Notes under the pieces: generated by a model
What the model was told of the DNA's origin: nothing
Seen by the model: only the letters and a program-made list of their open reading frames with translations
The model's database searches: none
Made by a program: the position numbers and the translations under genes
IMG/VR virus record: IMGVR_UViG_3300045970_000794
Span: 62,001 to 126,000 of that record
DNA length: 64,000 nucleotides
Strand: one strand, 5' to 3'
Shown: positions 6,943 to 26,813 of the stretch, piece after piece
How positions within the stretch are numbered: position 1 is the stretch's first letter
Layout: every line of letters begins with the position of its first letter

Positions 6943-7494
6943 TTATTGTTTTTTATAAATTCCAACAAATTTACCCGCTTGGAAGAATTCAAACCCATTA
7001 GGTATATTCTTTTTAAAAAGGTAACTATATAAATCCATTCTTCGATTACTTGATGGGGTTTCACCTTTACGAGAATTATATGTTGGCTCAGCGAAAATCA
7101 TTTGAAGTGGTATATCAGCATCATTTAATTTACCAAGAGCACTAGCGATAATACTCTTAACTGTATTCATAATCATAATTACGTCACCTTTATTTGACGT
7201 ATCAGCGAATAAACCTTCATCTTCTCTAAAACTAACATCTAAATAAGCACCATTTTCATCATGATTTAAATTAAGTTTTTTAAGTAATTCCATAAGTAAA
7301 TCTATTGATACTATGTCATTAGCAATTATAACTTCAATCTTATATTCACCATGTTTTTCATTTGGTACTCTGAATTTGTATAAGAAATTAATTAAATTAC
7401 CACGAATTACATTAACTGTTTGTATGAACGGTAAACCATCACCTTCACCAAACTCTTTTAATAATGCTTCCCTTAATTTAAGTTGTATATTCAT
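6943..7494 (-). CDS. hypothetical protein
   Basis: 183-aa ORF preceded by TATTTATA motif. Confidence 0.65.
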   Translation of the reverse strand: MNIQLKLREALLKEFGEGDGLPFIQTVNVIRGNLINFLYKFRVPNEKHGEYKIEVIIANDIVSIDLLMELLKKLNLNHDENGAYLDVSFREDEGLFADTSNKGDVIMIMNTVKSIIASALGKLNDADIPLQMIFAEPTYNSRKGETPSSNRRMDLYSYLFKKNIPNGFEFFQAGKFVGIYKKQ

Positions 7495-7506
7495 AAAATA
7501 ATTTTA

Positions 7507-8670
7507 TTATAAATATCTGGTGAACTTATCAAATTCAGCATGTTCGATTGCTCTACCCATGTCTGGACCTGGTTTTATTCCTTTATCTAACATTTCATCA
7601 CCAGTAACTGATAATTTAAACTGAACAAACGCCTCAATCATTTTCATATCCAATGCATTTAATTCAGCAAATCTTATTAACTCATTAGGCTCGATTTTAG
7701 AGACTATCTCAGCTTTTTTGTATCTGAATACCAATTCTGGTTTAAAGTTAAGCATACGCAATAAAAAGACTATTTTAGATACCTCTATCCAACTATATGT
7801 TAAAGCGTTTAATGCCTTTTGAACTTCTTCTAGATTATTTTTAATTAATAGTCCAGCAATTAATACAATTGGGTCCTTTTCTTCAATAACACCAGCCATA
7901 TTAACATTTAATTTACCAAATATCCATTTAAGTAAATCATATTGTCTGTACATACCAAATAAATGAGTAATTGATTTTGCTGATTTAAATGATTTCAAAA
8001 ATTCATCCCTAATTCTCTCTGGTGAAATACCTTCCAAGCTAGAATCATTTCTTAATGCCATATCAGTAGCTTCATCAAGATTAGAACCAAATCTAGCTGC
8101 GAAACGAATCGCTCTCATGATTCTAAGTCTATCTTCACCAAATCTATCCATTGGCTTACCTACAGTTCTAACAACTCCATTTTCAATATCTTTACGCCCT
8201 TTAACCAAATCAACGATTTCACCAGTTTTAAGGTCATAGAATAACGCATTAATAGTTAAGTCACGTCTTTTCACATCTTTATTTATGTTTGTGAAATTAA
8301 CTCCATCTGGCCTACGCCCAGAACCAACATCACTACGAAAAGTTGCAATCTCAAATTCATCATTAGCAGTAAACACATTAACAACACCAAAAGCTTTACC
8401 AGTTTCTAATATATTAGTAACAAATGGTTGTCCTTTAAGTGTAGCAATAACTTGGTCTGGTGTAGCATCAGTAGCAAGGTCAAAATCTTTAGGTTCTTTT
8501 CCTAATAACGCATCCCTAACTGAACCACCAACTAGGTAAAGGTCAAATCCTTTACTAGCCATAGCGTTTCTAATTAAAATGATGTCATTAGGTACTTGGA
8601 TGTGTGTTTTCTTCCTTTGTCCTAATAACCTTTGTTTTATTCTATTAAATACTGATTCTATAATTTCCAT
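7507..8670 (-). CDS. cca: CCA-adding enzyme / tRNA nucleotidyltransferase
   Basis: LVGGSVRD...KDFDLAT...RRDLTINALFYD...EDRLRIMRAIRFAARF; start MEII at 8670 lies just downstream of a TAnnTTTG promoter. Confidence 0.9.
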   Translation of the reverse strand: MEIIESVFNRIKQRLLGQRKKTHIQVPNDIILIRNAMASKGFDLYLVGGSVRDALLGKEPKDFDLATDATPDQVIATLKGQPFVTNILETGKAFGVVNVFTANDEFEIATFRSDVGSGRRPDGVNFTNINKDVKRRDLTINALFYDLKTGEIVDLVKGRKDIENGVVRTVGKPMDRFGEDRLRIMRAIRFAARFGSNLDEATDMALRNDSSLEGISPERIRDEFLKSFKSAKSITHLFGMYRQYDLLKWIFGKLNVNMAGVIEEKDPIVLIAGLLIKNNLEEVQKALNALTYSWIEVSKIVFLLRMLNFKPELVFRYKKAEIVSKIEPNELIRFAELNALDMKMIEAFVQFKLSVTGDEMLDKGIKPGPDMGRAIEHAEFDKFTRYL

Positions 8671-8713
8671 GATATTTTTTTTTGCAAAGATACTAATTAT
8701 AATATAAATATCC

Positions 8714-8744
8714 AAAAAAAATGGCGAGAAAATTTCCCCGCCAT
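8714..8744 (-). terminator. intrinsic terminator ending the amber-tRNA/pth operon
   Basis: ATGGCG...CGCCAT hairpin plus T run. Confidence 0.6.
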
Positions 8745-8748
8745 CATT

Positions 8749-9198
8749 TTAATGATAAAATAATCCTTTTTTCACTTTAAGTATTATTCTAGCCTCCTCT
8801 ATTTGAACTTTAAGTCGTTTATATTCGGCTCTAAGTTTAATGAGCTCTTGTTCTTGGTGACTTGGTTTGATTTTAATCGTCACACCAGTGATTACACCAA
8901 TTTTAATCATTACATGGAAGAATAAATTGATTGACCTAAGGCTTTTACGTTCTAATGAAATATAAATGCGTTTAGCCATTTTTTTCTTACCGTTTTTACT
9001 CATATTATTTAATATATCACTATTAATAGGGATTGATGCAAGGTTTGCGATATTTGATTCTTCACCATTAATCATTACTACATAGTTATTTTCTTTAATA
9101 ATATCAATAATATGATATAATGCATTATCAAATGCATTCATTAAGTCTTTAGTGTTTCTATAACCTAATACTTCTTTGTTTGTTACTATAGTTTCCAT
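8749..9198 (-). CDS. hypothetical protein (downstream of TAG-containing leader ORF)
   Basis: 149-aa ORF with C-terminal coiled coil. Confidence 0.65.
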   Translation of the reverse strand: METIVTNKEVLGYRNTKDLMNAFDNALYHIIDIIKENNYVVMINGEESNIANLASIPINSDILNNMSKNGKKKMAKRIYISLERKSLRSINLFFHVMIKIGVITGVTIKIKPSHQEQELIKLRAEYKRLKVQIEEARIILKVKKGLFYH

Positions 9199-9275
9199 AA
9201 TTTAAATTTTTTATTTGTTTTTATTTTATTTTACCATGATTTTAACGTATCATGATTTGACGTTATTTTCCCGAG

Positions 9276-9326
9276 TTATAATATGGAAACTGTGGGACAT
9301 CTGATTTTAATCTATAAATCTTTCAT
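9276..9326 (-). CDS. mini leader ORF with in-frame amber: MKDL*IKIRCPTVSIL
   Basis: ATG AAA GAT TTA TAG ATT AAA ATC AGA...TAA, preceded by an A-rich initiation region. Confidence 0.6.
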
Positions 9327-9336
9327 AACTTTAATT

Positions 9337-9690
9337 TTAAATTATTTTATTATTGTATAATTTTAATGCTAATGGTAAACTGCTGCATAGTTTATCGGAA
9401 CCTTCACAAGGTTCTAAGGCAATAGCAGTTATCTCGTAACCAAGGTCTGGCTCGATGAATGTAGAATATTTAATGTTGCGATTTTCGGCTTTGGAAAGTA
9501 ATTCTTTGAGGTGTTCCTCATTACGTGCCGATAAATAAACGAGATATTTGGAATCTCGGTGCCAAATTTTGGCAACTTCTGAATGGTCATGCTGAAATTG
9601 AACGGCAGCGTGTCCCGCTTGAACTGCTTGATAGCTAGGTTCTAAATCGTCTCTGACAATTACATACATTTTTCTGTTAATCTACGTCAT
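9337..9690 (-). CDS. Pth2-like peptidyl-tRNA hydrolase with in-frame TAG at codon 3
   Basis: MT*INRKMYVIVRDDL...QAVQAGHAA...F.EPDLG..ITAIA (PTH2 motifs); upstream ATG ACG TAG ATT is in frame. Confidence 0.8.
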
Positions 9691-9732
9691 AATTTTAATT
9701 TTTAAGTTAAACAATTTTATTTATAATTTTTG

Positions 9733-9807
9733 AGACTCTAGTTGGATTCGAACCCACGCTGACGGGTTTAGAAGCCGCCGCTTTAGACCAAGCTAAGCTA
9801 TAGAGCC
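9733..9807 (-). tRNA. amber suppressor tRNA (CTA anticodon)
   Basis: GGCTCTA/TAGAGTC, D stem GCTT/AAGC, GCGGC-TTCTAAA-CCCGT, U73. Confidence 0.75.
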
Positions 9808-9820
9808 ATTTAATTTAATG

Positions 9821-9852
9821 CAAAGATAATACAAATAATTTAAATGTCCAAA
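9821..9852 (-). promoter_or_regulatory. Bacteroidota sigma70-type promoter
   Basis: TTTG-N20-TATCTTTG; similar motifs near 665-700, 8684-8716, 17892-17926, 22390-22422, 28214-28246, 29049-29082. Confidence 0.75.
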
Positions 9853-10141
9853 TATTTTTGCAGTTTTTTTAAAAAAAATCATAATAGTCTGATTATTAAT
9901 TAATAAAAAACGCTAAAATAATATAAACAAATATTAATGTATAAAGTAAAGCAGCATTTAAAAACCTATTTAAGGTTCCATAAATGCCACTTGACTTATC
10001 ATCACCACCATTAAACAACTTAAAGTTAAAAAATTGATGTGGTTTTACTATTAATGATATTATCGATTTCAATACAAACATTAAATTATTTTTTTATAAT
10101 AAATATCATCAAAATCAATAATATACAAAATAATTTATTAA

Positions 10142-10667
10142 CTACCTGTTTAAAATTTTACCAAAGCGAATTACTTTTTCTATGAATTCTTCCTCTGTAC
10201 CATTATTATCAATGATTACATCAGCACAAGATATGCCAATATTAAATGAATCAGCTGACTCTTGTTCTAATCTTTTAGATGCATCAACCCAAACAATTAA
10301 ATCAAATAACCCTTGTTTCATACATTCTTCAATTTCACCCCTATCTCTCATACCAACATAACAGTCGGCTAATTCAAGAATTCCTTTAGCTAATCTAGCT
10401 CGGTCATCTTTATTATAATCACAAATCACAAATCATATTATACCATTCAGCTCTATGATTTGACCTATCTTCGTAACATTCCTCAGATGTCTTATAATCA
10501 TACTTTTCACTTAATTCATCATAAATGAATATATCAGCAGCTGCTTGTGATGATGAGATAAACTTTAAACCAAAATTATCTCTTAAAATTTCAGCAAACG
10601 TATCTTTACCATGTCTGGCATTTCCAAGGACTAACAGCCTTGGGAACTTACTTTTTCTTGTCTTCAT
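10142..10667 (-). pseudogene. P-loop nucleotide (dNMP-type) kinase split by a 7-bp tandem duplication
   Basis: GNARHGKDT P-loop; ATTTGTG repeated near 10420-10434 separates the 82-aa and 95-aa ORFs, both containing ICD. Confidence 0.75.
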
Positions 10668-11424
10668 AAAAATCTATTTTAAATGTTTTTTTAATTAATT
10701 TATTGTTTTTAATTGCAAATACTATTGAACTTTGAGATACTCCTATGACTCTAGCAGCTTCAGCTCCAGATTCTAAAATAGTAATTTCATTTGTTATAAT
10801 GTTTTTAATCGTAACTTTTTTACTACGTAAACTAATTTGACCAATTTTAAAAGAGTTAGAATTAGATTTAAAATTTTTAGTAAAACGAGCCTCAACTAAC
10901 TCTTTAATATCGGAATTTTTTATTTCATCATGATAAAACCAAGCAATATTTTTAACTGTTTTACAATTACCAAGGCAACATTTTGGAATTACACTTCGAT
11001 GTGTTTTTAATTCTCTAGATGCATCTTCAGCACTATTAAATTCATAAACAATAACACCTTCTTTATTATAACCAATCACACTTTTAGCATTATTACCTTT
11101 CTTGAAACTAGTGTTGTTACCAAATGTACAACCATCACCACCTAATGTATTATTAACTAAATCAAATCCCCATAATTTCATTTGACTAATCCAATATTTT
11201 TCCCAAAAAACCCATTCATCTATCGGTACTACATCAATCACCCATAAAATTGGTTTTAACTCTTCATTTCTTAATGAATTAATCCAATTTCGTTTATGTG
11301 TTTGATGGTCTCTAGCTCTATTCAAATGAGCTTTATATCTTTGTGTTATATTATTCGCTTTACCAACATATCTTACATGACCAGTCCTAGGGTCAATAAG
11401 AACATAAATATTTGTCGTTTCCAT
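10648..11424 (-). CDS. GIY-YIG homing endonuclease with NUMOD1-like repeats
   Basis: NIYVLIDP...YVGKA...E.YWI...L.N; C-terminal AEAARVIGV repeats. Confidence 0.85.
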   Translation of the reverse strand: METTNIYVLIDPRTGHVRYVGKANNITQRYKAHLNRARDHQTHKRNWINSLRNEELKPILWVIDVVPIDEWVFWEKYWISQMKLWGFDLVNNTLGGDGCTFGNNTSFKKGNNAKSVIGYNKEGVIVYEFNSAEDASRELKTHRSVIPKCCLGNCKTVKNIAWFYHDEIKNSDIKELVEARFTKNFKSNSNSFKIGQISLRSKKVTIKNIITNEITILESGAEAARVIGVSQSSIVFAIKNNKLIKKTFKIDFYEDKKK

Positions 11425-11458
11425 ATTAATACATTTCTATATAAATATGGTGAAATCT

Positions 11459-11533
11459 TTAAAAAGTTACAAGCCCATGTCTTCCCGAACCAATGATAAG
11501 TAATTTAGGGAATTGTTTCTTTTCATTAACCAT
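11459..11533 (-). pseudogene. orphan N-terminus of the kinase gene (MVNEKKQFPKLLIIGSGRHG)
   Basis: Manual translation; parallels MKTRKSKFPRLLVLGNARHG downstream of the endonuclease. Confidence 0.75.
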
Positions 11534-11555
11534 TTTAATAATATTTTATTTAATT

Positions 11556-11990
11556 TTATAATCCTTGACTGCAAATACCGTAATTATACTCCAAATGAAC
11601 AGTATTATCGTCATATTGAACAGCTTTAATGTATGGTGACTCATATCCATGGCTCCTAGAATCAAAATACTCGTAATGATGCATAATATCAGATTGAATT
11701 ATCACTTGTTTTCTATTCTTAGCTAATTTACCAGATTTGGTTAATATGATATTATCATAAATCAATTGGTTGATGTCAGTATCTAAATTCATGATTTTTT
11801 CAATAAATTCAGTTTTATATCGATTAAATTCAGCTTCATTTGAAGTGAATCCTTCATCACCACCGTATTCGTTAACATCTTGGGAGTGTTTGAAGTTTTC
11901 TTCATCCCATTCTAATTGATTAACTTTATTTACTAGGGCTTCAATATCATATATAATATCTAAACCATTAATTTTAATATTTTTTTCCAT
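11556..11990 (-). CDS. hypothetical protein
   Basis: 144-aa ORF. Confidence 0.6.
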   Translation of the reverse strand: MEKNIKINGLDIIYDIEALVNKVNQLEWDEENFKHSQDVNEYGGDEGFTSNEAEFNRYKTEFIEKIMNLDTDINQLIYDNIILTKSGKLAKNRKQVIIQSDIMHHYEYFDSRSHGYESPYIKAVQYDDNTVHLEYNYGICSQGL

Positions 11991-11992
11991 AA

Positions 11993-12493
11993 TTACTTTA
12001 ATAATATTGTTATATACCCAATTGGTTCGGTACTATCATCTAAAACTTCAAAATTTGTAATTTCTTTAGTACTTTTAATTGAAAGTCTGGTTGGTATATA
12101 CCGATTAGAATCACATTCAAAACACCATTCAACTTCACAAGCAATTACTACTTCATGTACTTTACCACCAATTTTAAAGTAATCAATTGTTTCAGCACCA
12201 TCTTTATTTAATTTCTCATCACCAAACATATCATAATAACCACAAGTAAAGGCATGTGATTTTAATTGTGTAGTAATAAATTCTTCCACAGTATTAAAGA
12301 CTGGTTGAGGGCACATGACTTCTTTTGTGTTTTTATTAATTTCTTCGGCTTGCTTTTCAGCTTCTTTTTCAATACCATCAAAAATATCTAGAGTTTCAAT
12401 GAATTCATTAAATGGGCATTCAATTTTTTTATCATTGAATGCTTTTTCAATCACTTCAATACTGTATTTCTTCATAATAATTTCATTAGACAC
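11993..12493 (-). CDS. hypothetical protein
   Basis: 166-aa ORF. Confidence 0.6.
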   Translation of the reverse strand: MSNEIIMKKYSIEVIEKAFNDKKIECPFNEFIETLDIFDGIEKEAEKQAEEINKNTKEVMCPQPVFNTVEEFITTQLKSHAFTCGYYDMFGDEKLNKDGAETIDYFKIGGKVHEVVIACEVEWCFECDSNRYIPTRLSIKSTKEITNFEVLDDSTEPIGYITILLK

Positions 12494-12525
12494 AAATATA
12501 CTATAAAATTATGATAGATGCCATA

Positions 12526-13201
12526 TTATTTTAATAATTCTATCTTACCTTTTAAGATTTCTTTTAGACTCACTCTTTTACCAGTTATATGGTCAATAAC
12601 AGTATCATCTTTAACTCTATATGTTCTTCGTTTATCACCACGACACCCATTACCGATTTGTTCTCTTCTCTCATCAATTTCTTCTTCAATAACACCAGTT
12701 TGATAGAATTTATTAACCCGCTTAGTTAATTCACTTAATGCTTCTTCCCTATTTTTATGCTGGTCACGACCATCACGCACTACTTTAATACCAGTAGCAT
12801 AATGAGTCATTACAACGCATGAATCAGTAGTGTTGCGGTGCTGACCACCTTTACCACTACCTCTAATAGTTTCAATACGAATCTCAGATGGGTGTATTTC
12901 AACCATCTTATATTCATTTTTTTCTAAAATTGCTACAGTTATTGAACTTGTGTGAACTCTACCACGTTTTTCTGTTGGTGAAACTCTTTGCCATAAATGG
13001 GTGCCCGATTCTGAATTGAAAAAATCGGAGGCTTCTGGTGAGCTAAAGGCAGAAAACTATATTACTAGGTGTCTCACTTAATAATTCATATCTAAAATCG
13101 TTACGATTACACGCTTTCACGTATATTTTATATAACTCCCTAACTAATAATTTTGAATCTTCACCACCCTCGGCAGCTCTAATTTCAACTGTTGTTTTCA
13201 T
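12526..13201 (-). CDS. class I peptide chain release factor (about 224 aa) requiring a +1 frameshift at CTT-TAG-C
   Basis: Frame 0: [19 protein letters not shown]...VFCL*; +1 frame: [34 protein letters not shown]...GSGKGGQH, joining ORF 12526-12906. Confidence 0.85.
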
Positions 13202-13937
13202 AATATTTATTTTTATTTAAATTTCCAATATATTCTATACCGTTTATTATTCTTGTTGTAGCCCATAACGGACGTAAATTATTCAACGCATTTACAACAC
13301 TAGGCGGTGAATCAATTGGGAATGACGATATTGGTTTAATATGGTCAACATGCCATTCACCATGATTATCCCACGACATCCCTTCAGTAAATAGTGATTC
13401 AATATGATGTTTAAATTGGGTTGCAGAATACCCTAACAAGTCAATAGTATGACCTTCTTTAGACTTACCTAATCGTTTAAGTGTGAAGTATAATAAATCA
13501 CCCCAAATTTTACGATATGGGTGATTTTTCCTGTATTTTTGTCTATTTTCATCAATCTTACTTTTATTTAATTTTCGGTATTCTTTATCATAAGCTCGTT
13601 TCTTATCTCGATTTTCTTTAGCGTAAAGTCTATCTTTCTCTCTAACATCATCAACATTATCTAACCGATATTGTTTTTGATAATCATTTCGCTTATCCTT
13701 ATTAACTTCCCGATATTCTTTAAAATAAATATCTAACTTATCTTTATTCTTATCTCTATACTCACTGTCTTGTTTACGTTTAGAATCTAAATATGTTTCA
13801 GAATAAACAACAACATCGAAAATTTCTTCTCTCAATTTTTTTATTGTTAACCCATGTTTTTTCAAATGACTACTACTTAAATATAATAATTCGTTATCAC
13901 AAATAGGACAGACAATATAATCAACATTTTTTACCAT
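13185..13937 (-). CDS. HNH endonuclease
   Basis: FKHHIESLFTEGMSWDNHGEWHVDHIKP...NALNNLRPLW. Confidence 0.85.
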   Translation of the reverse strand: MVKNVDYIVCPICDNELLYLSSSHLKKHGLTIKKLREEIFDVVVYSETYLDSKRKQDSEYRDKNKDKLDIYFKEYREVNKDKRNDYQKQYRLDNVDDVREKDRLYAKENRDKKRAYDKEYRKLNKSKIDENRQKYRKNHPYRKIWGDLLYFTLKRLGKSKEGHTIDLLGYSATQFKHHIESLFTEGMSWDNHGEWHVDHIKPISSFPIDSPPSVVNALNNLRPLWATTRIINGIEYIGNLNKNKYYENNS

Positions 13938-13998
13938 AATTATAAATATAATGAAAAATTAAAAAACATCAATAGTAGCGAGTATTTATTTTAAAAAT

Positions 13999-14026
13999 AA
14001 AAAAAAAGGAATCCGAAGATTCCTTT
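13999..14026 (-). terminator. terminator of RNA operon 2
   Basis: AAGGAATC-ttcg-GATTCCTT plus T run. Confidence 0.8.
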
Positions 14027-14036
14027 GTAAAATGGA

Positions 14037-14089
14037 CAGGTTAGCTTTTTTTTTCTAATAAAGAGCGTTTTAATTGCTGAATGTAACCT
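14037..14089 (-). ncRNA. stem-GCAA family small RNA
   Basis: AGGTTA-CATTCAGCAA...TAACCTG. Confidence 0.6.
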
Positions 14090-14097
14090 TTACCTTG

Positions 14098-14162
14098 TAG
14101 AGGTGGATGGATATGAACCGCCAACCTGTCTTACGACCGCTCTGGACTTGAGCTACACCTCT
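14098..14162 (-). ncRNA. anticodon-less tRNA-like RNA
   Basis: AGAGGTG/CACCTCT, D arm, GTC-GTAA-GAC in place of the anticodon arm, T-like arm. Confidence 0.7.
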
Positions 14163-14173
14163 AATTGAATTGT

Positions 14174-14286
14174 TGGTGTGAAAACCTATTTCGTTCTGGT
14201 TTTTCTTTTACCCGTCATTACATCGGGACACAAATTACGTCCGTAATCGGAGACTATCCACGATTATGTTACCATAACCTTTTCAC
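14174..14286 (-). ncRNA. structured RNA closed by a 7-bp acceptor-like stem with encoded ACCA
   Basis: GTGAAAA/TTTTCAC-A-CCA; no canonical T loop. Confidence 0.4.
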
Positions 14287-14346
14287 AATTTTAACCTTGG
14301 CCTTCGGTTTCCATCGAGATTTAGATGTTTCGTAATCAACAATTTG

Positions 14347-14423
14347 TAGCGGGTCATGGGAGTCGAACCCAGTATCTCTGAGGTTATGAGCCTCGAATGA
14401 TTATTCCGTTTCACTCACCCGCA
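14347..14423 (-). tRNA. tRNA-Met(CAT), initiator-like
   Basis: 1:72 mismatch, GAGG-CTCATAA-CCTC. Confidence 0.8.
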
Positions 14424-14429
14424 ATATCG

Positions 14430-14502
14430 TGGGAAAGAAAGGAGTCGCACCTTAACTTGTATCAACCTCAGATTGTTACCAACCCTACTATACAACTTTC
14501 CC
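14430..14502 (-). ncRNA. anticodon-less tRNA-like RNA
   Basis: GGGAAAG/CTTTCCC-A, GTAT/ATAC stem with expanded loop, AAGG-TGCGACT-CCTT. Confidence 0.6.
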
Positions 14503-14515
14503 AATTTTTTTTTTG

Positions 14516-14587
14516 TAGCGGGAGTAGGACTCGAACCTACGACCTACGGGTTATGAGCCCGCCGAGCTACCACTGCTCCACCCCGCA
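14516..14587 (-). tRNA. tRNA-fMet(CAT)
   Basis: 1:72 mismatch, GCGGG-CTCATAA-CCCGT. Confidence 0.9.
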
Positions 14588-14621
14588 ATATATTTTTAGT
14601 TTAGCTATTTTCAAAAAAAGT

Positions 14622-14694
14622 GTTAAGACGGCTGGATTTGAACACAGCAACTCGGGATTTAGTCCACGCAAGATACTATTTCTATACATCTTAA
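14622..14694 (-). pseudogene. degenerate tRNA-like sequence
   Basis: TTAAGAT/GTCTTAA acceptor and GTTCAAATC T loop; aberrant anticodon loop GGA-CTAAA-TCC. Confidence 0.5.
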
Positions 14695-14726
14695 CACATA
14701 TATAAATATGCGCTAAATTGAAAAAG

Positions 14727-14798
14727 TACTCGATAGGAGAATCGAACTCCTATTTAAAGCTTGAAAAGCTTCCGTCCTAACCGTTAGACGAATCGAGC
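14727..14798 (-). tRNA. tRNA-Glu(TTC)
   Basis: Standard cloverleaf, loop TTTTCAA. Confidence 0.9.
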
Positions 14799-14806
14799 AT
14801 ATGACA

Positions 14807-14866
14807 CAGGAAAACTTTGTTTTCAAATTTTCAGATTTTGATTTTTAAGTTTGCTGAATGTTTCCT
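14807..14866 (-). ncRNA. stem-GCAA family small RNA
   Basis: AGGAAAC-ATTCAGCAA...GTTTTCCTG. Confidence 0.6.
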
Positions 14867-14882
14867 TTAGTCACTTTGTAAA

Positions 14883-14950
14883 CAGGCTAGTTACTTTAAC
14901 ACTACTGAATTTTAAATTTAGTTTGTTTTTAGTTTTGCTGAACCTAACCT
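14883..14950 (-). ncRNA. stem-GCAA family small RNA
   Basis: AGGTTAG-GTTCAGCAA...AACTAGCCTG. Confidence 0.6.
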
Positions 14951-14958
14951 TAATCCCG

Positions 14959-15051
14959 TGGCCCCCGCTGGATTTGAACCAGCACCTATCTTGCGATATG
15001 CTCTCGAATCATTTCTATAAATAGAAGTTATTCTCCTTGAGCTAGGTGACC
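14959..15051 (-). ncRNA. anticodon-less tRNA-like RNA with expanded D loop
   Basis: GGTCACC/GGGGGCC, GCTC/GAGC, TATC-GCAA-GATA, GCTGG-TTCAAAT-CCAGC. Confidence 0.7.
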
Positions 15052-18755: not shown

Positions 18756-18950
18756 AATAATAAATATCCCCACAATATAAAAACGCCCAGCTCCACGTGT
18801 CATAAAATAAAAAAAGTGCCATTGGCACTTTTCATATTAATATAAACCAAAATGTTAGTTTATCATAAAAGTAATAGTTTGTTAGTATTTAGTCGAATTT
18901 ATTCAATTCGTGTAGTGCATACCACGTACAGGTAACTAACCTAATGCACC

Positions 18951-19364
18951 TGGAGTTGGAGGGTAATGAACCCTCGTCTTACGAGCTCTTCAATAATATT
19001 CTACATGCTTAGGATTAAGTTTTCTTACTTACCAAAAATATTTAGTTGATTTATGTCACGGTTCAACTACTAAAACCGAGTGTTAATTAGACACCGACAC
19101 TACGGTGCTTTTTTTGTCATTCTTACTCTACTTACACTAAACTAAGTAAAGACTCAGCTTAATGTCATTGAGCAATGACCCGTCTGGCTTCAGTTAGGCA
19201 GCCATCGCCTCTCCAGCAAAAACACCACATGTGGCGTTTGCAAGGAAGTTTTCGTCAACAGATAATTCGTTGCCAGTTACTATTTTGATAGGTTTTTAAG
19301 TGTTTCCATCTAACACTGCATGCTAATTATTTACGACTACACGTAATCTAATCATTTCAACCCC
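18951..19364 (-). ncRNA. ssrA: tmRNA
   Basis: 5' GGGGTTG / 3' CAACTCC-A with G3:U70, T arm GAGGG-TTCATTA-CCCTC, tag ORF 19274-19194 ending AA*. Confidence 0.9.
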
Positions 19365-22444: not shown

Positions 22445-23107
22445 ATGTATCGAATTATTTTAGCTAAAAACAAAAAACATAAAAAAATACTGTTCAAATC
22501 TAGGGATAAAGATTTGACTTATGATGAATTTAATGCATTAATTGAAGAGAATGTTGTATTATTCCCAAAAAAATTCGTTAACTATAATACTATCACCCCA
22601 GTCCAATATGAAATATTAATAATAAAAAGACGTAAAGATGGTGATATTAATAGAATGGTTAGAAATGATTTGGGGCAACTTGTTGAAGAAACAACAACAT
22701 CCGCAAAATGGATTATAATAGATAAACACCCATATTACATGGAAGAAACATTCTGGGTGTGGGGTTTTAACCATAGGTCAGACCGTTTCGATGCAAAACG
22801 AATTGTTCAAGAAATCTTATTAAAGAACATTCGTAAAAAACATATGGTAAAGCAAGTTGTAATTGTCTATAATAAGCTAATTATACAGTCAGATTCAGAC
22901 GATTTTAATCTAATCATATGCAAGTGTCAAAATGATGCTGTTCGTCTTCACAACGCTTTAAAACAAGCCGTATCAAAATCCAGAATAAAAAACATAATTT
23001 TCTTTGGATTAGCTAAGCCAAAACAAATTAGTGATATGTATGAAATCATTATGGAACATACTGGTTGGGACCGAATGCAAGTTAGAAGATTAAGTACAAG
23101 GCATTAA
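22445..23107 (+). CDS. hypothetical protein
   Basis: 220-aa plus-strand ORF. Confidence 0.65.
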   Translation: MYRIILAKNKKHKKILFKSRDKDLTYDEFNALIEENVVLFPKKFVNYNTITPVQYEILIIKRRKDGDINRMVRNDLGQLVEETTTSAKWIIIDKHPYYMEETFWVWGFNHRSDRFDAKRIVQEILLKNIRKKHMVKQVVIVYNKLIIQSDSDDFNLIICKCQNDAVRLHNALKQAVSKSRIKNIIFFGLAKPKQISDMYEIIMEHTGWDRMQVRRLSTRH

Positions 23108-23634
23108 GGACCTGGTGTTATAATTTCATCATCCTCAGCTTCATTCAAATCTACTTGACCAACATCAAAATTTTTAGCAATTTCATTAATTACATCATTA
23201 ATTTTACTCATATCAGCTGGCTTAATTTGAATTGGATTAATGCATTCAATTCTTTCTTTATCATCAGTTGGTAGGAAGAATGCCATCATATTTGCTTTAC
23301 GAGCTGCAATTACATCATTCACTGATTGAGCGTAAGGTGCCATTATTTTCGGATTCATCATTAATTCTCGGTCCAAATAAAATACTAGTATTAATGGGTG
23401 TGACTCACTTGCAGTGTACTCTGATTCTTCATCTTTTTGTTTAATATATTCATCAAATGAAACATATTCATATTTTTCTAATGGGATATCGTATTTCCTC
23501 ATTAATTCAGATTCTTTATCTAATTTACCATTTTTATCCTTAACAAATTCATGACACTCAATTGAATTATCATTATCATCTTTTAAATAAACTAGATAAA
23601 CGTCATCCCCAGTGCATTTTGTAACTACTTTCAT
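23104..23634 (-). CDS. hypothetical protein
   Basis: 176-aa ORF. Confidence 0.65.
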   Translation of the reverse strand: MKVVTKCTGDDVYLVYLKDDNDNSIECHEFVKDKNGKLDKESELMRKYDIPLEKYEYVSFDEYIKQKDEESEYTASESHPLILVFYLDRELMMNPKIMAPYAQSVNDVIAARKANMMAFFLPTDDKERIECINPIQIKPADMSKINDVINEIAKNFDVGQVDLNEAEDDEIITPGP

Positions 23635-23703
23635 ACTATAATTTTAATGTATTATTATTATAGCGTAATAATATTTAAAATTTTTGAATTAGTAAAGGAT
23701 ATT

Positions 23704-23738
23704 AAAAAAAAATGGCCACAATCGTTAGATTATGACCA
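23704..23738 (-). terminator. terminator after vWA gene and small RNA
   Basis: TGGTCATAATC/GATTGTGGCCA plus T run. Confidence 0.7.
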
Positions 23739-23753
23739 ATTTTTAACTTGAGA

Positions 23754-23903
23754 CAGAATGGGGGAGTCGTTTACTTCAAGATTCCGATTAGAAGGTTTTT
23801 TTTGTTTCACACGTTTATAGTGCTCGGTAGAATAATATCTAAAACTACCAACGGATTACAGTTATTAACATTTTCATATTTTTACCGTTGCCGCAATCAT
23901 TCT
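23754..23903 (-). ncRNA. stem-GCAA family RNA directly downstream of the TROVE/vWA gene
   Basis: AGAATG-ATTGCGGCAACGGTAAAAAT...CATTCTG. Confidence 0.6.
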
Positions 23904-23914
23904 TTACTCAAAGT

Positions 23915-24988
23915 TTATCCTAGATTGATATTTGCATATCTTTCTGACTTAACAACATCCATCATCATTGCATATGGAGTGAAATCTTTACCAGCTAATA
24001 ATGATTTCAAAATCGATGGTGAAAATCCACTTACGAGGCAAGTACCTTTTTTATCAAATTGTACTGGGAAATTGTCGTTTCTAGCGTGCAAGTTCCAATA
24101 TACAATTTTAGGTAATACGTAACCAGCATCTGCATACATTCTTTCAACCATTGCTTGCGCAGTATCTGAACGTATAGTAGCACTATTGAATTCCATATCT
24201 GAGAAAATAATCAACATAGTTGGCATTTCATCAGCTGGTACATTGTGCTTAACCGCTTGATTTAAAACCATACGGTACATAGCTTCAATATCAGTACTCA
24301 TTTCCCAATGAGCACGTTTCAATTGACTATATCTATCGCTCAAAGAACCCTTCAAGTACTGTAACTCTGGTCTTGAACTGAAAGTAACGAAAGCGTCCTT
24401 GAACATACCAACATTTCTTTCACTGATGTAAAGACCAAGTGAGATACATACGTCCATACATGTAAGTGTTCCACCACCAGCTGGGCAAGTCATTGAACCT
24501 GATACATCACAAACTGGTAACAATCTTTCCTTATTACCTTCAAGAAAATTAGGTAAAGCATTCCACTGTGCGTCAGCACCGTTAGAATTACCGTTATTAA
24601 GATTTTTGATGATATCGTATGGGTATACGGCACCAGCATTAATCTTAGTTTCACCTTTCTTCAATGAATCTAAGTATTTTGTGAATCTTTCGTAATCTCT
24701 CTTACCGAAAGCTTTCATATAGCCAGAGATAGCCTTTGATGGAAGTTTGCTATATTCAATAGCATCCCAATCTTTAGAACACATTTTTTGTTCAACAGTA
24801 TTTGACATTCTAACCAATAACTGTCTGTATTCTTTTGGAGACAAACCTAAGTATTTTCTCAACATAGTTGCTTGTAATTTCTTAGTTCTATCACCAACAT
24901 GTGGTCTTGGCATCCACTTAGCAACCAAACTCCCCGTCATTATTTTTAACGATAATAAACTTTTTAATTCTTCTTTTTTCGTTTTCAT
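23915..24988 (-). CDS. TROVE/Ro60-like DUF2828-type protein, C-terminal piece with vWA domain
   Basis: AKWMPR...NTVEQKMC...INAGAVYPY...CDVSGSM (MIDAS)...IFSDMEF...VYWNL...SGFSP. Confidence 0.85.
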   Translation of the reverse strand: MKTKKEELKSLLSLKIMTGSLVAKWMPRPHVGDRTKKLQATMLRKYLGLSPKEYRQLLVRMSNTVEQKMCSKDWDAIEYSKLPSKAISGYMKAFGKRDYERFTKYLDSLKKGETKINAGAVYPYDIIKNLNNGNSNGADAQWNALPNFLEGNKERLLPVCDVSGSMTCPAGGGTLTCMDVCISLGLYISERNVGMFKDAFVTFSSRPELQYLKGSLSDRYSQLKRAHWEMSTDIEAMYRMVLNQAVKHNVPADEMPTMLIIFSDMEFNSATIRSDTAQAMVERMYADAGYVLPKIVYWNLHARNDNFPVQFDKKGTCLVSGFSPSILKSLLAGKDFTPYAMMMDVVKSERYANINLG

Positions 24989-25080
24989 ATATTTTCATGT
25001 TAAATTGTTCGATAATTATTTATCTTTTTCAAATATTAACTATATTTATTATTAGGCATCCACTTAAAACTTTTATATTT

Positions 25081-25809
25081 ATGGAAACAATACCTTATAC
25101 TTACAAATTGATTTTTAAACCTACTGGTCAATACTATTATGGTGTTAGATACGCTAAAGGTTGTAATCCAACTGATTTATGGGACAAATATTTCACATCT
25201 TCTAAACACATCCATAAACTTATTAAAGAATATGGATTAAACTCTTTTATTATTAAGATTACTAAAACATTTAACGATAAAAATGACGCTATTACTCATG
25301 AATTAAATGTATTAACTAGAGCTAATGCTCACAAAAATGGTAAATTTATTAATAAAACAATTTGTAAAGCACCGCCATCACATGATGGATTGATAATAAT
25401 TCACCACATTGAATTAGATTTTGAAACCTTTCACAGTCCTAATTTACCAATTCCCATTGGGTGGATAAAAGGTACTAATGATAAACACAAAATAACCCAA
25501 TCTAATATTCGTAAAGGTAAACCAGCTCATAATAAAAATAAAAAATGTAAATTAACTGGTCCTTGTACCAAAGAAAGAAAAATAGCTATTAGTGAATCAA
25601 GAAAGCTAACACCAAAAATAACATGTGAATACTGTGGTAAACAATGTGATGGTGGTAATTTTAAAAGATTTCACGGAGATAACTGTAAATCGAACCCTAA
25701 TATTGACCAACAAAAAATCAAAGAACGTTCTGAGATAACTAAAAAATCTTATTTAACTCAAATAAATAAAGGTAATTTTAATAAGTTTAAAGGGAAAATT
25801 CGTGAATAA
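25081..25809 (+). CDS. GIY-YIG homing endonuclease (antisense, inside the split TROVE gene)
   Basis: PYTYKLIFKPTGQYYYGVRYAKGC...YFTSS; probable start METIP at 25081. Confidence 0.8.
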   Translation: METIPYTYKLIFKPTGQYYYGVRYAKGCNPTDLWDKYFTSSKHIHKLIKEYGLNSFIIKITKTFNDKNDAITHELNVLTRANAHKNGKFINKTICKAPPSHDGLIIIHHIELDFETFHSPNLPIPIGWIKGTNDKHKITQSNIRKGKPAHNKNKKCKLTGPCTKERKIAISESRKLTPKITCEYCGKQCDGGNFKRFHGDNCKSNPNIDQQKIKERSEITKKSYLTQINKGNFNKFKGKIRE

Positions 25810-26284
25810 GTCTTTCGCATTCTTCTTCAGATAATGTATCTATTTTAGAAAGAATTTCTTGCGCTTTTTGGTTTGACTTCAAACCTTCAGCAATAACTGC
25901 TAATGCATCATTTTGTAATGCAGTACCAACGAAAACCAAAAGGTCATCCCATCTACCATATTCTGAAATATGTACTAAATTTGCTTTGATAATATCTTTG
26001 TGCTTTTCAGCAAGATATGAACAGATTTCTCTGAAAATTCTTCTTTCACCAGCACCACCACGAACGTCACGTGCCCAGAATGCTAATCTAAGAGCAGTAA
26101 GTTTGTCTTCAGCAAATGCTTGGCTAAATGCGGCAATAATACGATTTTTATCTTGAGTTCTCATTGCACCTATTTGGAAAAATAGGTTTACGCATGAATT
26201 AAGTGAACTTGAATTGGTAACCATACCGTTTTCAGTAAAGGTATCTTCTGTCTGCATAGCAGATACTAATGAATTTTTTCTCAT
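25787..26284 (-). CDS. TROVE/Ro60-like DUF2828-type protein, N-terminal piece
   Basis: TENGMVT...FWARDVRGGAGERR...EYGRWDDL. Confidence 0.85.
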   Translation of the reverse strand: MRKNSLVSAMQTEDTFTENGMVTNSSSLNSCVNLFFQIGAMRTQDKNRIIAAFSQAFAEDKLTALRLAFWARDVRGGAGERRIFREICSYLAEKHKDIIKANLVHISEYGRWDDLLVFVGTALQNDALAVIAEGLKSNQKAQEILSKIDTLSEEECERLIHEFSL

Positions 26285-26325
26285 CGTGTTAAAGTTTTAA
26301 AAATTGTATTATTATTTCGGGACTG

Positions 26326-26365
26326 CAAAATTATAAACTATTTTATTAAAAGTCAAGCTTTTTTT
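26326..26365 (-). promoter_or_regulatory. promoter of TROVE gene, related to the two tRNA-operon promoters
   Basis: TTGACTTTTAATAAAATAGTTTATAATTTTG shares TTTTAATAAAATAGTTT with 6863 and 15925. Confidence 0.65.
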
Positions 26366-26567
26366 AATTCATTTTTAAATTATTTTCTAAGTTACTGAAT
26401 TTCACTGTTTTTCATAATATATTATTTTGATAATGCATTAATAATCCATTTTTTCATATCTTCTTTTGAATACGCACATACCCCATCTGGAACTATTAGT
26501 TTTTCAATTAAAAGTTGAAAAGCAAAATCAGTATCAGTTTCAGTTGGATTATAAAGCTTTTCGCTGA

Positions 26568-26813
26568 TTAATTCAGCAATTTTTTCGATTTCCATTTTAT
26601 ATTAATTAATAATGATTCCCTGGTGTACAACTTTGCATCACATTTATCGTAATCAGCATATTTTTCCCAACCACTTCCTTTTCGTTTTGTTAAATTTTCA
26701 ACGTAATTATCAATGTTAACAGACCCAATGGAACAAGTTGTAATGTCTTGACTAATCAATAGTTTACCATTCTTATAAAGTCTTATTAAATAATTACTTC
26801 CAGATGGATTCAT
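26568..26813 (-). CDS. hypothetical protein
   Basis: 81-aa ORF. Confidence 0.45.
   Translation of the reverse strand: MNPSGSNYLIRLYKNGKLLISQDITTCSIGSVNIDNYVENLTKRKGSGWEKYADYDKCDAKLYTRESLLINIKWKSKKLLN

What the first reader, a model, noticed from the sequence alone, without database searches (positions are those of the whole stretch)
23915..26284. TROVE/vWA gene in pieces around an antisense GIY-YIG endonuclease
Both halves are open. The N piece gains a helical tail (..NQKAQEILSKIDTLSEEECERLIHEFSL) and the C piece a new start (MKTKKEELKSLL..) before AKWMP. The 12-mer TAAGTGGATGCC (AKWMP) occurs twice, at 25056-25045 as a remnant and at 24920-24909. This parallels Aeh1 nrdA split by mobE, which stays functional. 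The added segments may reassemble the halves.
Basis: partly seen in the sequence, partly recalled or inferred. Interest (0 to 1): 0.6.

Follow-up and report, generated by a model that had tools for sequence, protein, structure and literature searches.

The report
Mobile cassette splits phage Ro60-like gene
A roughly 1-kb homing-endonuclease cassette has cut a huge freshwater phage's Ro60-like RNA-binding gene into two halves that look functional, and it brings the short peptide ends that appear to hold them together; this is a well-populated new example of a trick known from T4-like phages.

Summary
One coordinate is off: the second 12-mer lies at 25055-25066, not 25045-25056. The window belongs to a complete 362-kb phage from pond metagenomes.

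- **The gene.** It has a Ro60-type TROVE + vWA fold (Pfam DUF2828/DUF7788). Relatives encode it as one ORF of about 480 aa.
- **The insert.** Here a 960-bp insert (24924-25883) splits it in a loop between two helices. The insert encodes an acidic 31-aa tail on the N piece, an antisense GIY-YIG/zinc-finger endonuclease, and a basic 21-aa head on the C piece.
- **Spread.** At least 82 protein clusters from other assemblies are stand-alone N pieces with the same conserved tail. All 18 split loci examined keep both halves open, including one that has lost the endonuclease.
- **Mobility.** On the host-gene tree, split alleles are scattered among intact ones. Monophyly is rejected, and several split/intact sister pairs exist. 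Endonuclease and host-gene identities disagree. The whole tail-endonuclease-head unit therefore moves.
- **Assembly.** A complex prediction supports binding of the halves, with tail and head in the interface.
- **The extra 12-mer.** It is conserved beside the endonuclease start in 12 further cassette-bearing loci (identical in 7, one base different in 3) and inverted in two of them. It looks like a target-site mimic, not a scar.

This is a new member of a known kind: Aeh1 nrdA/mobE and the T4 MobA element.

The parts
25883..26284 (-). N piece, core: codons 1-134, the first helical repeats of the TROVE-like ring
   Evidence: Pfam DUF2828 positions 1-136 and PHROG 850 positions 10-146. Homology with intact alleles ends at codon 134.
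25787..25882 (-). Cassette-encoded acidic C-terminal tail of the N piece (codons 135-165) plus the TAA stop; overlaps the endonuclease 3' end by 23 nt
   Evidence: Absent from intact alleles. A conserved motif ending in LSEEEC occurs in at least 82 stand-alone N-piece clusters. Mean net charge of 77 tails is -2.6. Residues 137-163 lie in the predicted interface.
25081..25809 (+). Homing endonuclease gene, antisense to the split gene. GIY-YIG domain about 25081-25365; C2HC zinc-finger DNA-binding region about 25624-25686
   Evidence: PHROG 314 'homing endonuclease' at 1e-16. Pfam SegE_GIY-YIG scores 21 bits, below the cut-off of 25. Invariant Y..YYYG.R...E...N and CxxC..H...C columns. The best Foldseek hits of its model are the I-TevI catalytic domain. 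All full-length relatives in IMG/VR sit between split halves of this gene.
25055..25066 (-). Copy of the AKWMP-coding 12-mer, 14 nt upstream of the endonuclease ATG; proposed target-site mimic or operator
   Evidence: Identical or nearly so, 9-23 nt from the endonuclease ATG, in 12 further cassette-bearing loci. It is inverted in the L068/L157/L176 subtype. It matches the two commonest variants of the site in intact alleles.
25042..25050 (-). AATAAATAT box just downstream (gene sense) of the 12-mer copy; role unknown
   Evidence: Conserved after the copy in most cassettes. It is not enriched in the window: 12 matches against 9.8 expected.
24926..24988 (-). Cassette-encoded basic N-terminal head of the C piece (codons 1-21), including the new start codon
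   Evidence: K5, L8 and L12 are invariant in 8 C pieces of 45-65% identity. Mean net charge of 13 heads is +2.4. Residues 3-27 lie in the predicted interface.
24909..24920 (-). Native AKWMP-coding 12-mer; conserved site next to the insertion point and presumed endonuclease recognition sequence
   Evidence: In 82 distinct intact alleles, 52 have this 12-mer with at most one mismatch.
23915..24925 (-). C piece, core: rest of the TROVE-like ring plus the vWA domain with a DxSxS MIDAS motif
   Evidence: Pfam DUF2828 positions 276-395 plus DUF7788 at 2.4e-50; PHROG 850 positions 143-475. Invariant D161, S163 and S165.
24924..25883 (.). The mobile cassette as a whole (960 bp): tail, endonuclease, 12-mer copy, head
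   Evidence: A 6-kb contig of a relative in run X3 joins 24923 to 25884 with 24 other letters between. Seven split/intact pairs place cassettes of 0.9-1.14 kb at the same point, replacing 4-40 bp.
23713..23738 (-). Terminator-like hairpin downstream of the C piece; the only one predicted in 23700-26500
   Evidence: consensus scan only.

Best explanation
A mobile homing-endonuclease cassette of about 1 kb sits inside the phage's Ro60-like (TROVE + vWA) gene, in a surface loop just before the conserved AKWMP motif.

The cassette carries three things:
1. coding sequence that gives the upstream half an acidic helical tail of about 30 aa and a stop;
2. an antisense GIY-YIG/zinc-finger endonuclease gene;
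3. a start codon and a basic head of about 20 aa for the downstream half.

The two halves are translated separately and reassemble non-covalently into the normal fold, with tail and head forming part of the interface. The insertion is therefore close to harmless.

The endonuclease presumably cuts intact alleles of co-infecting relatives near the AKWMP-coding site. Repair then copies the whole cassette in. This explains why split alleles are scattered among intact ones. The endonuclease can later decay, be replaced or be lost while the split persists.

The copy of the target 12-mer next to the endonuclease start is most likely a binding site for the endonuclease's own DNA-binding domain, as in I-TevI-type autoregulation.

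Shown here: anatomy, conservation, polyphyly, cassette boundaries, and a predicted complex. Inferred: actual cleavage and homing, assembly in cells, and the operator role.
For: **Gene and fold**
- Intact relatives are single ORFs of about 470-500 aa. The model of one (pLDDT 89.4, pTM 0.89) puts the break between helix 122-134 and helix 138-143.
- That model matches Ro60/TROVE structures (9kop, 9l5y, 2i91, 1yvp, 2nvo) at E 6e-9 to 1e-6 and TM 0.5-0.6.

**The split is kept, not decaying**
- A search that could only see proteins of 91-289 aa found 252 matches. Of the 120 listed clusters, at least 82 are stand-alone N pieces with the conserved tail, on contigs up to 385 kb.
- All 18 split loci read have both halves open. 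L179 has no endonuclease and only a 31-nt gap. L159 has a frameshifted endonuclease. L002 has overlapping halves.
- Tail pN/pS is 0.48 and head 0.57, against 0.45 and 0.46 for the cores.

**The halves are predicted to bind**
- Complex prediction gave ipSAE 0.74 (runs 0.78, 0.73, 0.74) against a best control of 0.00. Partner pLDDT was at least 73 and contact agreement at least 68%. The mark was reached by 58 of 80 solved complexes and 2 of 110 mismatched pairs; these counts hold only roughly here because my own alignments were used. The interface includes head 3-27 and tail 137-163.
- Tails are acidic (mean net charge -2.6) and heads basic (+2.4), the same charge logic as the Aeh1 NrdA tails (PMC3045599).

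**The cassette moves**
- With 18 split and 59 intact alleles, the tree needs at least 15 changes of state, 14 of them forced by starred branches.
- In a 35-row subset, holding the 11 split alleles together costs 922.6 lnL; p-AU 0.00076.
- Seven split/intact sister pairs have flanks 65-91% identical in DNA, with a 0.9-1.14 kb insert at the same point.
- Endonuclease and host identities are discordant. L147-L148: 89% endonuclease, 65% host. L067-L148: 63% endonuclease, 75% host.
- An intact allele and cassette fragments occur together in metagenome X3.

**Endonuclease turnover at one site**
- L143, L177 and L178 have HNH-type enzymes (PHROG 655) carrying the same zinc-finger region. L139 has an unrelated ORF in the gap.

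**The 12-mer copy**
- It is conserved in 12 further cassette-bearing loci and inverted in one subtype.
Against: - No expression, protein or activity data exist. No RNA run holds the locus.
- A complex prediction for two pieces of one fold is expected to score well, and it does not show that tail and head touch each other.
- The endonuclease's Pfam match is below threshold. Its model is only moderate (pLDDT 67) and its Foldseek E-values are weak (0.04-0.2).
- Cleavage specificity is unknown. The native 12-mer is intact in the donor, so protection from self-cleavage has to be assumed to come from the changed upstream flank.
- Polyphyly shows transfer of the cassette by recombination, not that the endonuclease drives it.
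- The AU test ran on a subset with the simpler model. The full-set test did not finish.
- pS is near saturation, so the pN/pS ratios are only comparative.
- The HNH-type cassettes carry at best a degenerate copy of the 12-mer.
Confidence: 0.75

Rival explanations
1. One ancient split, inherited vertically. The gap between the two genes is simply a safe landing place that various endonucleases invade later. Tail and head belong to the host gene, not to a mobile unit.
For: Endonuclease-free split alleles exist (L179, L002). Three different kinds of ORF occupy the gap. Tail and head motifs are homologous in all split alleles, which fits a single origin.
Against: Split alleles are scattered over the host-gene tree: at least 15 changes for 18 split alleles, close to the shuffled mean of 16.5. 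Monophyly is rejected in the subset test, p-AU 0.00076. Seven split/intact sister pairs have closely similar flanks. A single origin of tail and head combined with this scatter itself requires that the junction moves between alleles.
Confidence: 0.1
2. The cassette spreads only by ordinary homologous recombination between co-infecting phages. The endonuclease is inactive or irrelevant, a passenger.
For: Nothing here shows cleavage. Some copies are frameshifted or lost (L159, L179). Phage genomes are highly mosaic.
Against: The endonuclease ORF is intact in most cassettes, with catalytic-type residues invariant. It is more conserved than the host gene in many pairs. Relatives that share only the nuclease domain sit at other loci, while every relative that shares the DNA-binding part sits at this site. 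A mimic of the target site is conserved beside its start.
Confidence: 0.1
3. The gene is dead: the endonuclease insertion destroyed it and the two ORFs are decaying fragments.
For: There is a 1-kb interruption with a stop codon. Gene callers annotate the pieces as separate hypothetical proteins.
Against: Both pieces are open in all 18 split loci at 44-86% identity. The MIDAS and other invariant residues are kept. Constraint on the pieces and on tail and head equals that of intact cores. At least 82 N-piece clusters carry the conserved tail.
Confidence: 0.03
4. The halves are rejoined by RNA splicing, protein splicing or translational bypass.
For: Endonucleases often live in group I introns and inteins. 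The T4 MobA element carries a bypass cassette (bioRxiv 10.1101/2022.08.31.505936).
Against: No Rfam family, group I intron included, matches 23500-26700 at E up to 1. The endonuclease is antisense. The tail ends in TAA and the head starts at a conserved ATG. The extensions are about 30 and 20 aa, too short for split-intein halves, and the conserved Cys lies about 20 residues after the junction. The gap is about 800 nt.
Confidence: 0.02
5. The second 12-mer is a neutral scar of the original insertion, a leftover of the target, with no function.
For: It is identical to the native site 134 nt away and lies at the edge of the endonuclease module, where a target remnant would be expected.
Against: Among the 12 further cassette-bearing loci it is base-for-base identical in 7 and differs by one base in 3, although their endonucleases are only 57-89% identical and the surrounding spacer varies in length and sequence. 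In the other 2, the L068/L157/L176 subtype, it is inverted and carries the other common target variant. In L150, L155 and L148 it stays the same although the native site differs.
Confidence: 0.2

Closest known systems
Aeromonas phage Aeh1 nrdA split by the HNH endonuclease mobE (Crona et al. 2011, PMC3045599; review PMC2988022)
   Same: A free-standing homing endonuclease splits a gene that is contiguous in relatives. Both halves are made separately. Short, oppositely charged C- and N-terminal tails that came with the insertion are needed for the assembled enzyme.
   Different: That case is a single phage, an HNH enzyme in the same orientation as the host gene, and an essential enzyme with a split active site. 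There the tails promote dimerisation of heterodimers rather than pairing of the halves. Here there are dozens of lineages, a GIY-YIG enzyme in antisense, a Ro60-like RNA-binding protein, and tails shown to travel with the element. There is no biochemistry here.
T4 MobA element splitting topoisomerase II into genes 39 and 60 (Manning & Atkins 2022, bioRxiv 10.1101/2022.08.31.505936)
   Same: An element of about 1.1 kb made of an endonuclease flanked by a conserved C-terminal extension for ORF1 and an N-terminal extension for ORF2. There are repeated insertions at one site and close genome pairs with and without it. The endonuclease can be pseudogenised, lost or replaced by other families while the extensions survive.
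   Different: MobA is an HNH enzyme, co-oriented, with extensions of about 44 aa and the 50-nt ribosomal bypass cassette. Here there is no bypass, the extensions are shorter (about 30 and 20 aa), the endonuclease is an antisense GIY-YIG type, the host gene is different, and a conserved target-site copy sits beside the endonuclease start.
I-TevI autorepression through an operator that mimics its homing site (summarised in PMC2988022)
   Same: A GIY-YIG endonuclease with a zinc finger and a separate DNA-binding region. A sequence resembling the homing site lies just upstream of its own ORF.
   Different: I-TevI is intron-encoded. Its operator (15 of 20 identity to the homing site) overlaps a mapped late promoter, and binding without cleavage was measured. 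Here only the conserved 12-mer copy is seen; promoter, binding and cleavage are unknown.
Ro60 / Rsr / phage phiLo Ro60 (PDB 1yvp, 2i91, 2nvo, 9l5y; PMC12135203)
   Same: Whole-length fold match: a helical-repeat ring plus a vWA domain with a MIDAS motif.
   Different: Sequence identity is 12-18%. Pfam files this protein under DUF2828/DUF7788, not TROVE. No Y-RNA partner was found, and none of the solved proteins is made from two genes.
Fractured genes with split inteins and endonucleases (Dassa et al. 2009, PMC2677866)
   Same: Genes broken into two ORFs with an endonuclease gene between them, found in environmental metagenomes.
   Different: Those halves carry split-intein halves and are ligated by trans-splicing. 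Here the extensions are too short and carry no intein motifs.

Membership tests
Ro60 / TROVE + vWA proteins | Ring of helical repeats followed by a vWA domain (overall fold) | tested here: met
   The model of intact relative L070 (pLDDT 89.4) matches Ro60 structures at E 6e-9 to 1e-6 and TM 0.5-0.6 over the whole length.
Ro60 / TROVE + vWA proteins | MIDAS-type DxSxS motif in the vWA domain | tested here: met
   D161, S163 and S165 are invariant in 8 C pieces. D279, S281 and S283 are invariant in 71 intact proteins.
Ro60 / TROVE + vWA proteins | Sequence-level match to the TROVE family or to a solved Ro60 | tested here: not met
   Pfam gives DUF2828 and DUF7788 only. phmmer and hmmsearch against PDB sequences find nothing relevant.
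Ro60 / TROVE + vWA proteins | Bound Y RNA or misfolded RNA | not testable with these tools
   No Y-RNA family matched in the window at gathering score. That is no evidence of absence.
GIY-YIG homing endonucleases | GIY...YIG hairpin with conserved Arg, Glu and Asn, and the catalytic-domain fold | tested here: met
   Invariant Y8, Y18-Y20, G21, R23, E74 and N91. PHROG 314 at 1e-16. The top three Foldseek hits are the I-TevI catalytic domain (probability 0.95-0.99, TM to target 0.55-0.60), but E is only 0.04-0.2. Pfam SegE_GIY-YIG scores 21 bits, below the cut-off of 25.
GIY-YIG homing endonucleases | Presence/absence polymorphism at one site among close relatives | tested here: met
   Seven split/intact sister pairs, with the cassette at the same codon. 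An intact allele also occurs in run X3.
GIY-YIG homing endonucleases | Site-specific cleavage of the endonuclease-less allele | not testable with these tools
   Needs purified protein and an intact-allele substrate.
Endonuclease cassettes that split a gene and supply extensions (Aeh1 mobE, T4 MobA type) | Gene contiguous in relatives; split exactly where the endonuclease sits | tested here: met
Endonuclease cassettes that split a gene and supply extensions (Aeh1 mobE, T4 MobA type) | Extensions absent from intact alleles, conserved among split ones, inherited with the element | tested here: met
   (conservation). (scattered distribution, discordance with the host gene).
Endonuclease cassettes that split a gene and supply extensions (Aeh1 mobE, T4 MobA type) | Halves assemble; extensions needed for function | tested here: inconclusive
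   The prediction supports binding: ipSAE 0.74 against 0.00 for the best control, with tail and head in the interface. No experiment.
Group I intron or intein | Intron RNA structure, or intein blocks flanking the endonuclease | tested here: not met
   No Rfam match at E up to 1. The endonuclease is antisense. There is a stop after the tail and a conserved start before the head. No intein family appears in Pfam.
I-TevI-type autoregulatory operator | Homing-site-like sequence just upstream of the endonuclease ORF | tested here: met
   The 12-mer copy lies 9-23 nt from the ATG in 12 further cassette-bearing loci and matches the commonest target variants.
I-TevI-type autoregulatory operator | Overlaps the endonuclease promoter; bound but not cut | not testable with these tools
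   The promoter type of this phage is unknown. The sigma-70 scan is uninformative: 10 sites against 15.3 expected.

The most novel reading that the evidence does not exclude
The cassette is a self-contained 'split-and-tether' module. It carries a matched acidic tail and basic head that have evolved as portable heterodimerising peptides, so it can enter any allele of this Ro60-like gene without cost. Its endonuclease also binds a conserved mimic of its own target next to its start codon to limit its expression. The DNA-binding module stays fixed on this site while nuclease domains (GIY-YIG, HNH) are exchanged.
Probability: 0.45. Interest if true: 0.65.

Novelty: new member of a known kind. Interest (0 to 1): 0.52.

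Why it matters
**Rare kind, few studied cases.** The only examples I could read about are one phage (Aeh1 nrdA/mobE) and one element family (T4 MobA). This is a second large natural family, in a different gene and with a different endonuclease class. It has at least 82 N-piece clusters and many split/intact sister pairs. That is enough variation to ask which tail and head residues matter and how an element makes its own insertion harmless.

**Practical uses.**
- Annotation: the 160-aa and 360-aa ORFs should not be called fragments or pseudogenes.
- Protein engineering: the tail and head are candidate natural tethers of about 30 and 20 aa for splitting a helical-repeat protein.
- Endonuclease biology: a compact zinc-finger DNA-binding module appears here with two different nuclease domains on one target.

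**Open question.** The gene itself, a Ro60-like protein common in large phages, still has no known role there.

Tried and rejected
- **Megablast.** The locus against GenBank phages gave no match. Only protein-level searches worked.
- **PDB sequence searches.** Searches with the C piece and with the N-piece profile found nothing relevant. The fold search was needed.
- **Single-protein locus search.** With the endonuclease as query it found only one distant locus. An alignment query was needed.
- **An internal insert in intact proteins.** tblastn seemed to align tail and head to intact proteins L038-L040. Reading those ORFs showed only a short loop, so I rejected the idea that tail and head derive from an ancestral internal insert.
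- **Covariation of the copy with the native site.** It holds only for the inverted subtype. In L150, L148 and L155 the copy stays constant while the native site differs, so I dropped covariation as an argument.
- **AATAAATAT as a general promoter box.** It is not enriched in the window.
- **Sigma-70 and terminator scan.** Uninformative.
- **AU test on all 77 rows with the mixture model.** It did not finish in four calls. It was replaced by a 35-row test with LG+G4.
- **RNA evidence.** No RNA run holds the locus. The runs laid are contigs, so they say nothing about transcripts.
- It was redone from references.
Full report
**What is there**

The window is bases 62001-126000 of a 362,102-bp virus record with direct terminal repeats, rated complete. 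It has about 30% G+C. Its sequence words occur in pond and other freshwater metagenomes.

- a 165-aa ORF on the minus strand (25787-26284);
- an ORF on the plus strand (24997-25809). Its conserved start is the ATG at 25081, by alignment with six homologues;
- a 357-aa ORF on the minus strand (23915-24988).

All three end in TAA.

PHROG 850 ('RNA-binding protein') covers profile positions 10-146 with the first ORF and 143-475 with the third. They are therefore the two halves of one protein, and nothing is missing. Pfam gives DUF2828 for both and DUF7788 for the second.

The 12-mer of the finding occurs exactly twice in 64 kb, at 24909-24920 and at 25055-25066. Chance expectation is 0.12.

**What the gene is**

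Sequence searches against solved structures find nothing. I folded an intact relative (L070) with an alignment of 71 intact proteins; the model has pLDDT 89.4 and pTM 0.89. It matches Ro60/TROVE structures over its whole length. The matches include the Ro60 of Thermus phage phiLo, Xenopus Ro60 and Deinococcus Rsr, at E 6e-9 to 1e-6 and TM 0.5-0.6. The vWA part keeps a DxSxS motif. 'TROVE/vWA' is therefore right at the level of fold, though not of Pfam family.

The family is common in phages. tblastn finds it in 710 GenBank phage records, all under 60% identity, and as single genes where I looked, for example Cronobacter phage S13 gp245.

In the model the break falls in the loop between helix 122-134 and helix 138-143, just before the conserved AKWMP motif.

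**The split is widespread and conserved**

The word-based protein search sees only proteins of 0.55-1.75 times the query length. With the 165-aa N piece as query it therefore cannot see intact proteins. It still returned 252 matches.

Of the 120 clusters listed:
- at least 82 are stand-alone N pieces of about 160-167 aa, on contigs up to 385 kb;
- all of these carry the same C-terminal extension, two short helices joined around a nearly invariant LSEEEC-type motif. In 78 aligned tails, Leu is kept in 77, Asp in 74 and Cys in 74;
- 20 are fragments of intact genes, and the rest are truncated.

I read 18 split loci in DNA: the window, L067 (=L011), L068, L069, L139, L143, L147, L148, L150, L152, L154, L155, L158, L159, L176, L177, L178 and L179. 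I also read the distant L002. In every one both halves are open, and the C piece starts with a short basic helix in which K5, L8 and L12 are invariant. Intact alleles have neither tail nor head.

Over 66 pairs, pN/pS is 0.48 for the tail and 0.57 for the head, against 0.45 and 0.46 for the neighbouring cores. pS is near saturation, so this is a comparison and not an absolute value.

Tails are acidic (77 tails, mean net charge -2.6, mean pI 4.8). Heads are basic (13 heads, mean +2.4).

**Do the halves bind?**

Complex prediction used my alignments A3 and A4.
- ipSAE was 0.74 (runs 0.78, 0.73, 0.74) against 0.00 for the best of three controls.
- Partner pLDDT was at least 73, and the runs agreed in at least 68% of contacts.
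- In the tool's calibration the mark was reached by 58 of 80 solved complexes and 2 of 110 mismatched pairs. These counts hold only roughly with my own alignments.
- The confident interface includes head residues 3-27 and tail residues 137-163, with helical periodicity, besides the core contacts expected for one fold cut in two.

This supports binding but does not show it. It also does not say that tail and head touch each other.

**The thing in the middle**

The antisense ORF matches PHROG 314 'homing endonuclease' at 1e-16. Its Pfam match to SegE_GIY-YIG is weak, at 21 bits against a cut-off of 25.

The alignment of six homologues shows two features:
- an N-terminal GIY-YIG pattern with invariant Tyr, Gly, Arg, Glu and Asn;
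- a C-terminal CxxC...H...C zinc finger, doubled in one subtype.

Its model is moderate (pLDDT 67). The top three PDB matches are the I-TevI catalytic domain, with weak E-values.

In IMG/VR every relative that shares the full length (54-75% identity, L150-L159) lies between the two halves of this gene. Relatives that share only the nuclease domain lie elsewhere.

Other split alleles carry other things in the gap:
- L143, L177 and L178 have an HNH-type endonuclease (PHROG 655) fused to the same zinc-finger region.
- L139 has an unrelated 310-aa ORF.
- L159 has a frameshifted copy.
- L179 has nothing, only a 31-nt gap.
- L002, a 484-kb uncultured phage, has the two halves overlapping by 17 nt.

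Some cassettes carry an extra small ORF with no family match.

No Rfam family, group I introns included, matches the region.

**The cassette moves**

I built trees from N core plus C core, with tail and head removed.
- With 18 split and 59 intact alleles the tree needs at least 15 changes of state, 14 of them forced by well-supported branches. Shuffled labels give a mean of 16.5.
- In a 35-row subset, forcing the 11 split alleles together costs 922.6 log-likelihood units; p-AU is 0.00076. This used LG+G4. The full-set test with the mixture model did not finish.
- There are seven split/intact sister pairs. In each, DNA homology stops at the same codon on either side of an insert of 0.9-1.14 kb that replaces 4-40 bp. 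An example is L147 against L071: flanks 86-90% identical, with 1138 bp against 19 bp.
- In the window the same boundaries, 24924-25883, are given by a 6-kb contig of a relative in metagenome X3. It joins 24923 to 25884 with 24 other letters between. Low-depth contigs of the same run cover the endonuclease.
- Endonuclease and host-gene identities disagree in both directions. L147-L148: 89% against 65%. L067-L148: 63% against 75%. Window-L069: 69% against 56%.

Tail and head are homologous in all split alleles, yet the alleles are scattered. So the unit tail-endonuclease-head is what is transferred. Whether the endonuclease drives this (homing) or only rides along is inferred, not shown.

**The second 12-mer**

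It is not a decaying scar.
- In 12 further cassette-bearing loci the same sequence lies 9-23 nt from the endonuclease ATG. Three of them have a G instead of the final C. Here the endonucleases are 57-89% identical, and the spacer around the copy varies in length and sequence.
- It is followed within a few bases by an AATAAATAT box.
- In the subtype with two zinc fingers (L068/L157, L176) it is inverted and carries the AAA-Lys variant.
- These two variants are the two commonest forms of the site among 82 distinct intact alleles. The AAA-Lys variant occurs in 26 and the window's 12-mer in 14. In all, 52 of the 82 are within one mismatch of the window's 12-mer.
- In L150, L148 and L155 the copy stays constant although the native site differs.

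Conservation that does not depend on orientation, next to the start of a gene for a DNA-binding protein, fits a binding site. The known model is I-TevI, which represses its own promoter through an operator resembling its homing site and does not cut it because the cleavage motif is missing at the right distance (PMC2988022). I give this reading about 0.4. The HNH cassettes have at best a degenerate copy, and the AATAAATAT box is not a general motif of the window.

**Comparison with what is known**

Two precedents define the kind.

1. In Aeromonas phage Aeh1, mobE splits nrdA. [quoted passage not shown] The authors predicted that such tails may be general (PMC3045599).
2. For T4, Manning and Atkins describe the MobA element. 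It is about 1.1 kb: an endonuclease flanked by a conserved C-terminal extension for gene 39 and an N-terminal extension for gene 60. It has inserted repeatedly at one site, and close genome pairs exist with and without it. The endonuclease is sometimes lost or replaced while the extensions survive.

The present cassette has the same logic. It differs in these respects:
- host gene (a Ro60-like RNA-binding protein);
- endonuclease class and orientation (GIY-YIG, antisense);
- shorter extensions, and no bypass cassette;
- a conserved target-site copy.

The searchable literature holds nothing on split DUF2828 genes. I therefore file it as a new member of a known kind: well supported, useful, but not surprising to a specialist.

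**Limits**

Everything about function is computational. There is no transcript, protein or cleavage evidence. The phage is uncultured and its host unknown. What Ro60-like proteins do in phages remains open.

Noticed in passing
window 9732-9807 (-): A tRNA with anticodon CTA (an amber suppressor; ARAGORN labels it tRNA-Pyl) lies among 13 tRNA genes at 3129-15051. TAG is the rarest stop among long ORFs, 4 of 48. This raises the possibility of partial TAG read-through or recoding in this phage. The three genes of the finding all end in TAA.
   Followed up: partly
window 18950-19364 (-): A full-length tmRNA gene (Rfam RF00023, 72.6 bits, model positions 1-374) is encoded by the phage.
   Followed up: no
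window 14958-15051 (-): ARAGORN calls a 94-nt tRNA-Tyr with the unusual anticodon ATA. Rfam did not list it at gathering score.
   Followed up: no
L143:5396-6166, L177:3977-4798, L178:3969-4640: HNH-type homing endonucleases (PHROG 655) carry the same C-terminal zinc-finger region as the window's GIY-YIG enzyme and sit at the same site. This looks like nuclease-domain swapping on a constant DNA-binding module.
   Followed up: partly
L011:2858-3223; L147:5262-5477 (also L148, L155): Extra small ORFs ride inside some cassettes: 121 aa between the N piece and the endonuclease, and 71 aa between the endonuclease and the C piece. Neither has a Pfam or PHROG match.
   Followed up: partly
L147:6571-7266 (-): A second endonuclease-like ORF (weak NUMOD3 match) lies directly downstream of the C piece in a 384-kb relative, where homology with the intact relative L071 ends. 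The neighbourhood may be a hot spot for such genes.
   Followed up: no
L068:3875-3910 (gene sense, next to the inverted 12-mer copy): A near-perfect AT-rich inverted repeat of about 18 + 18 nt directly follows the inverted target copy in the L068/L157 cassette. Its role is unknown.
   Followed up: no
window 22445-23107 (+): A lone plus-strand 220-aa ORF sits among minus-strand genes just downstream of the C piece. It was not examined.
   Followed up: no
G000:C1:1966-2451 and window 5491-5691: The genome holds weak matches to parts of the endonuclease elsewhere: zinc-finger-like repeats near the genome start and a GIY-YIG-like stretch in the tRNA region. These suggest further endonuclease genes or remnants.
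   Followed up: no
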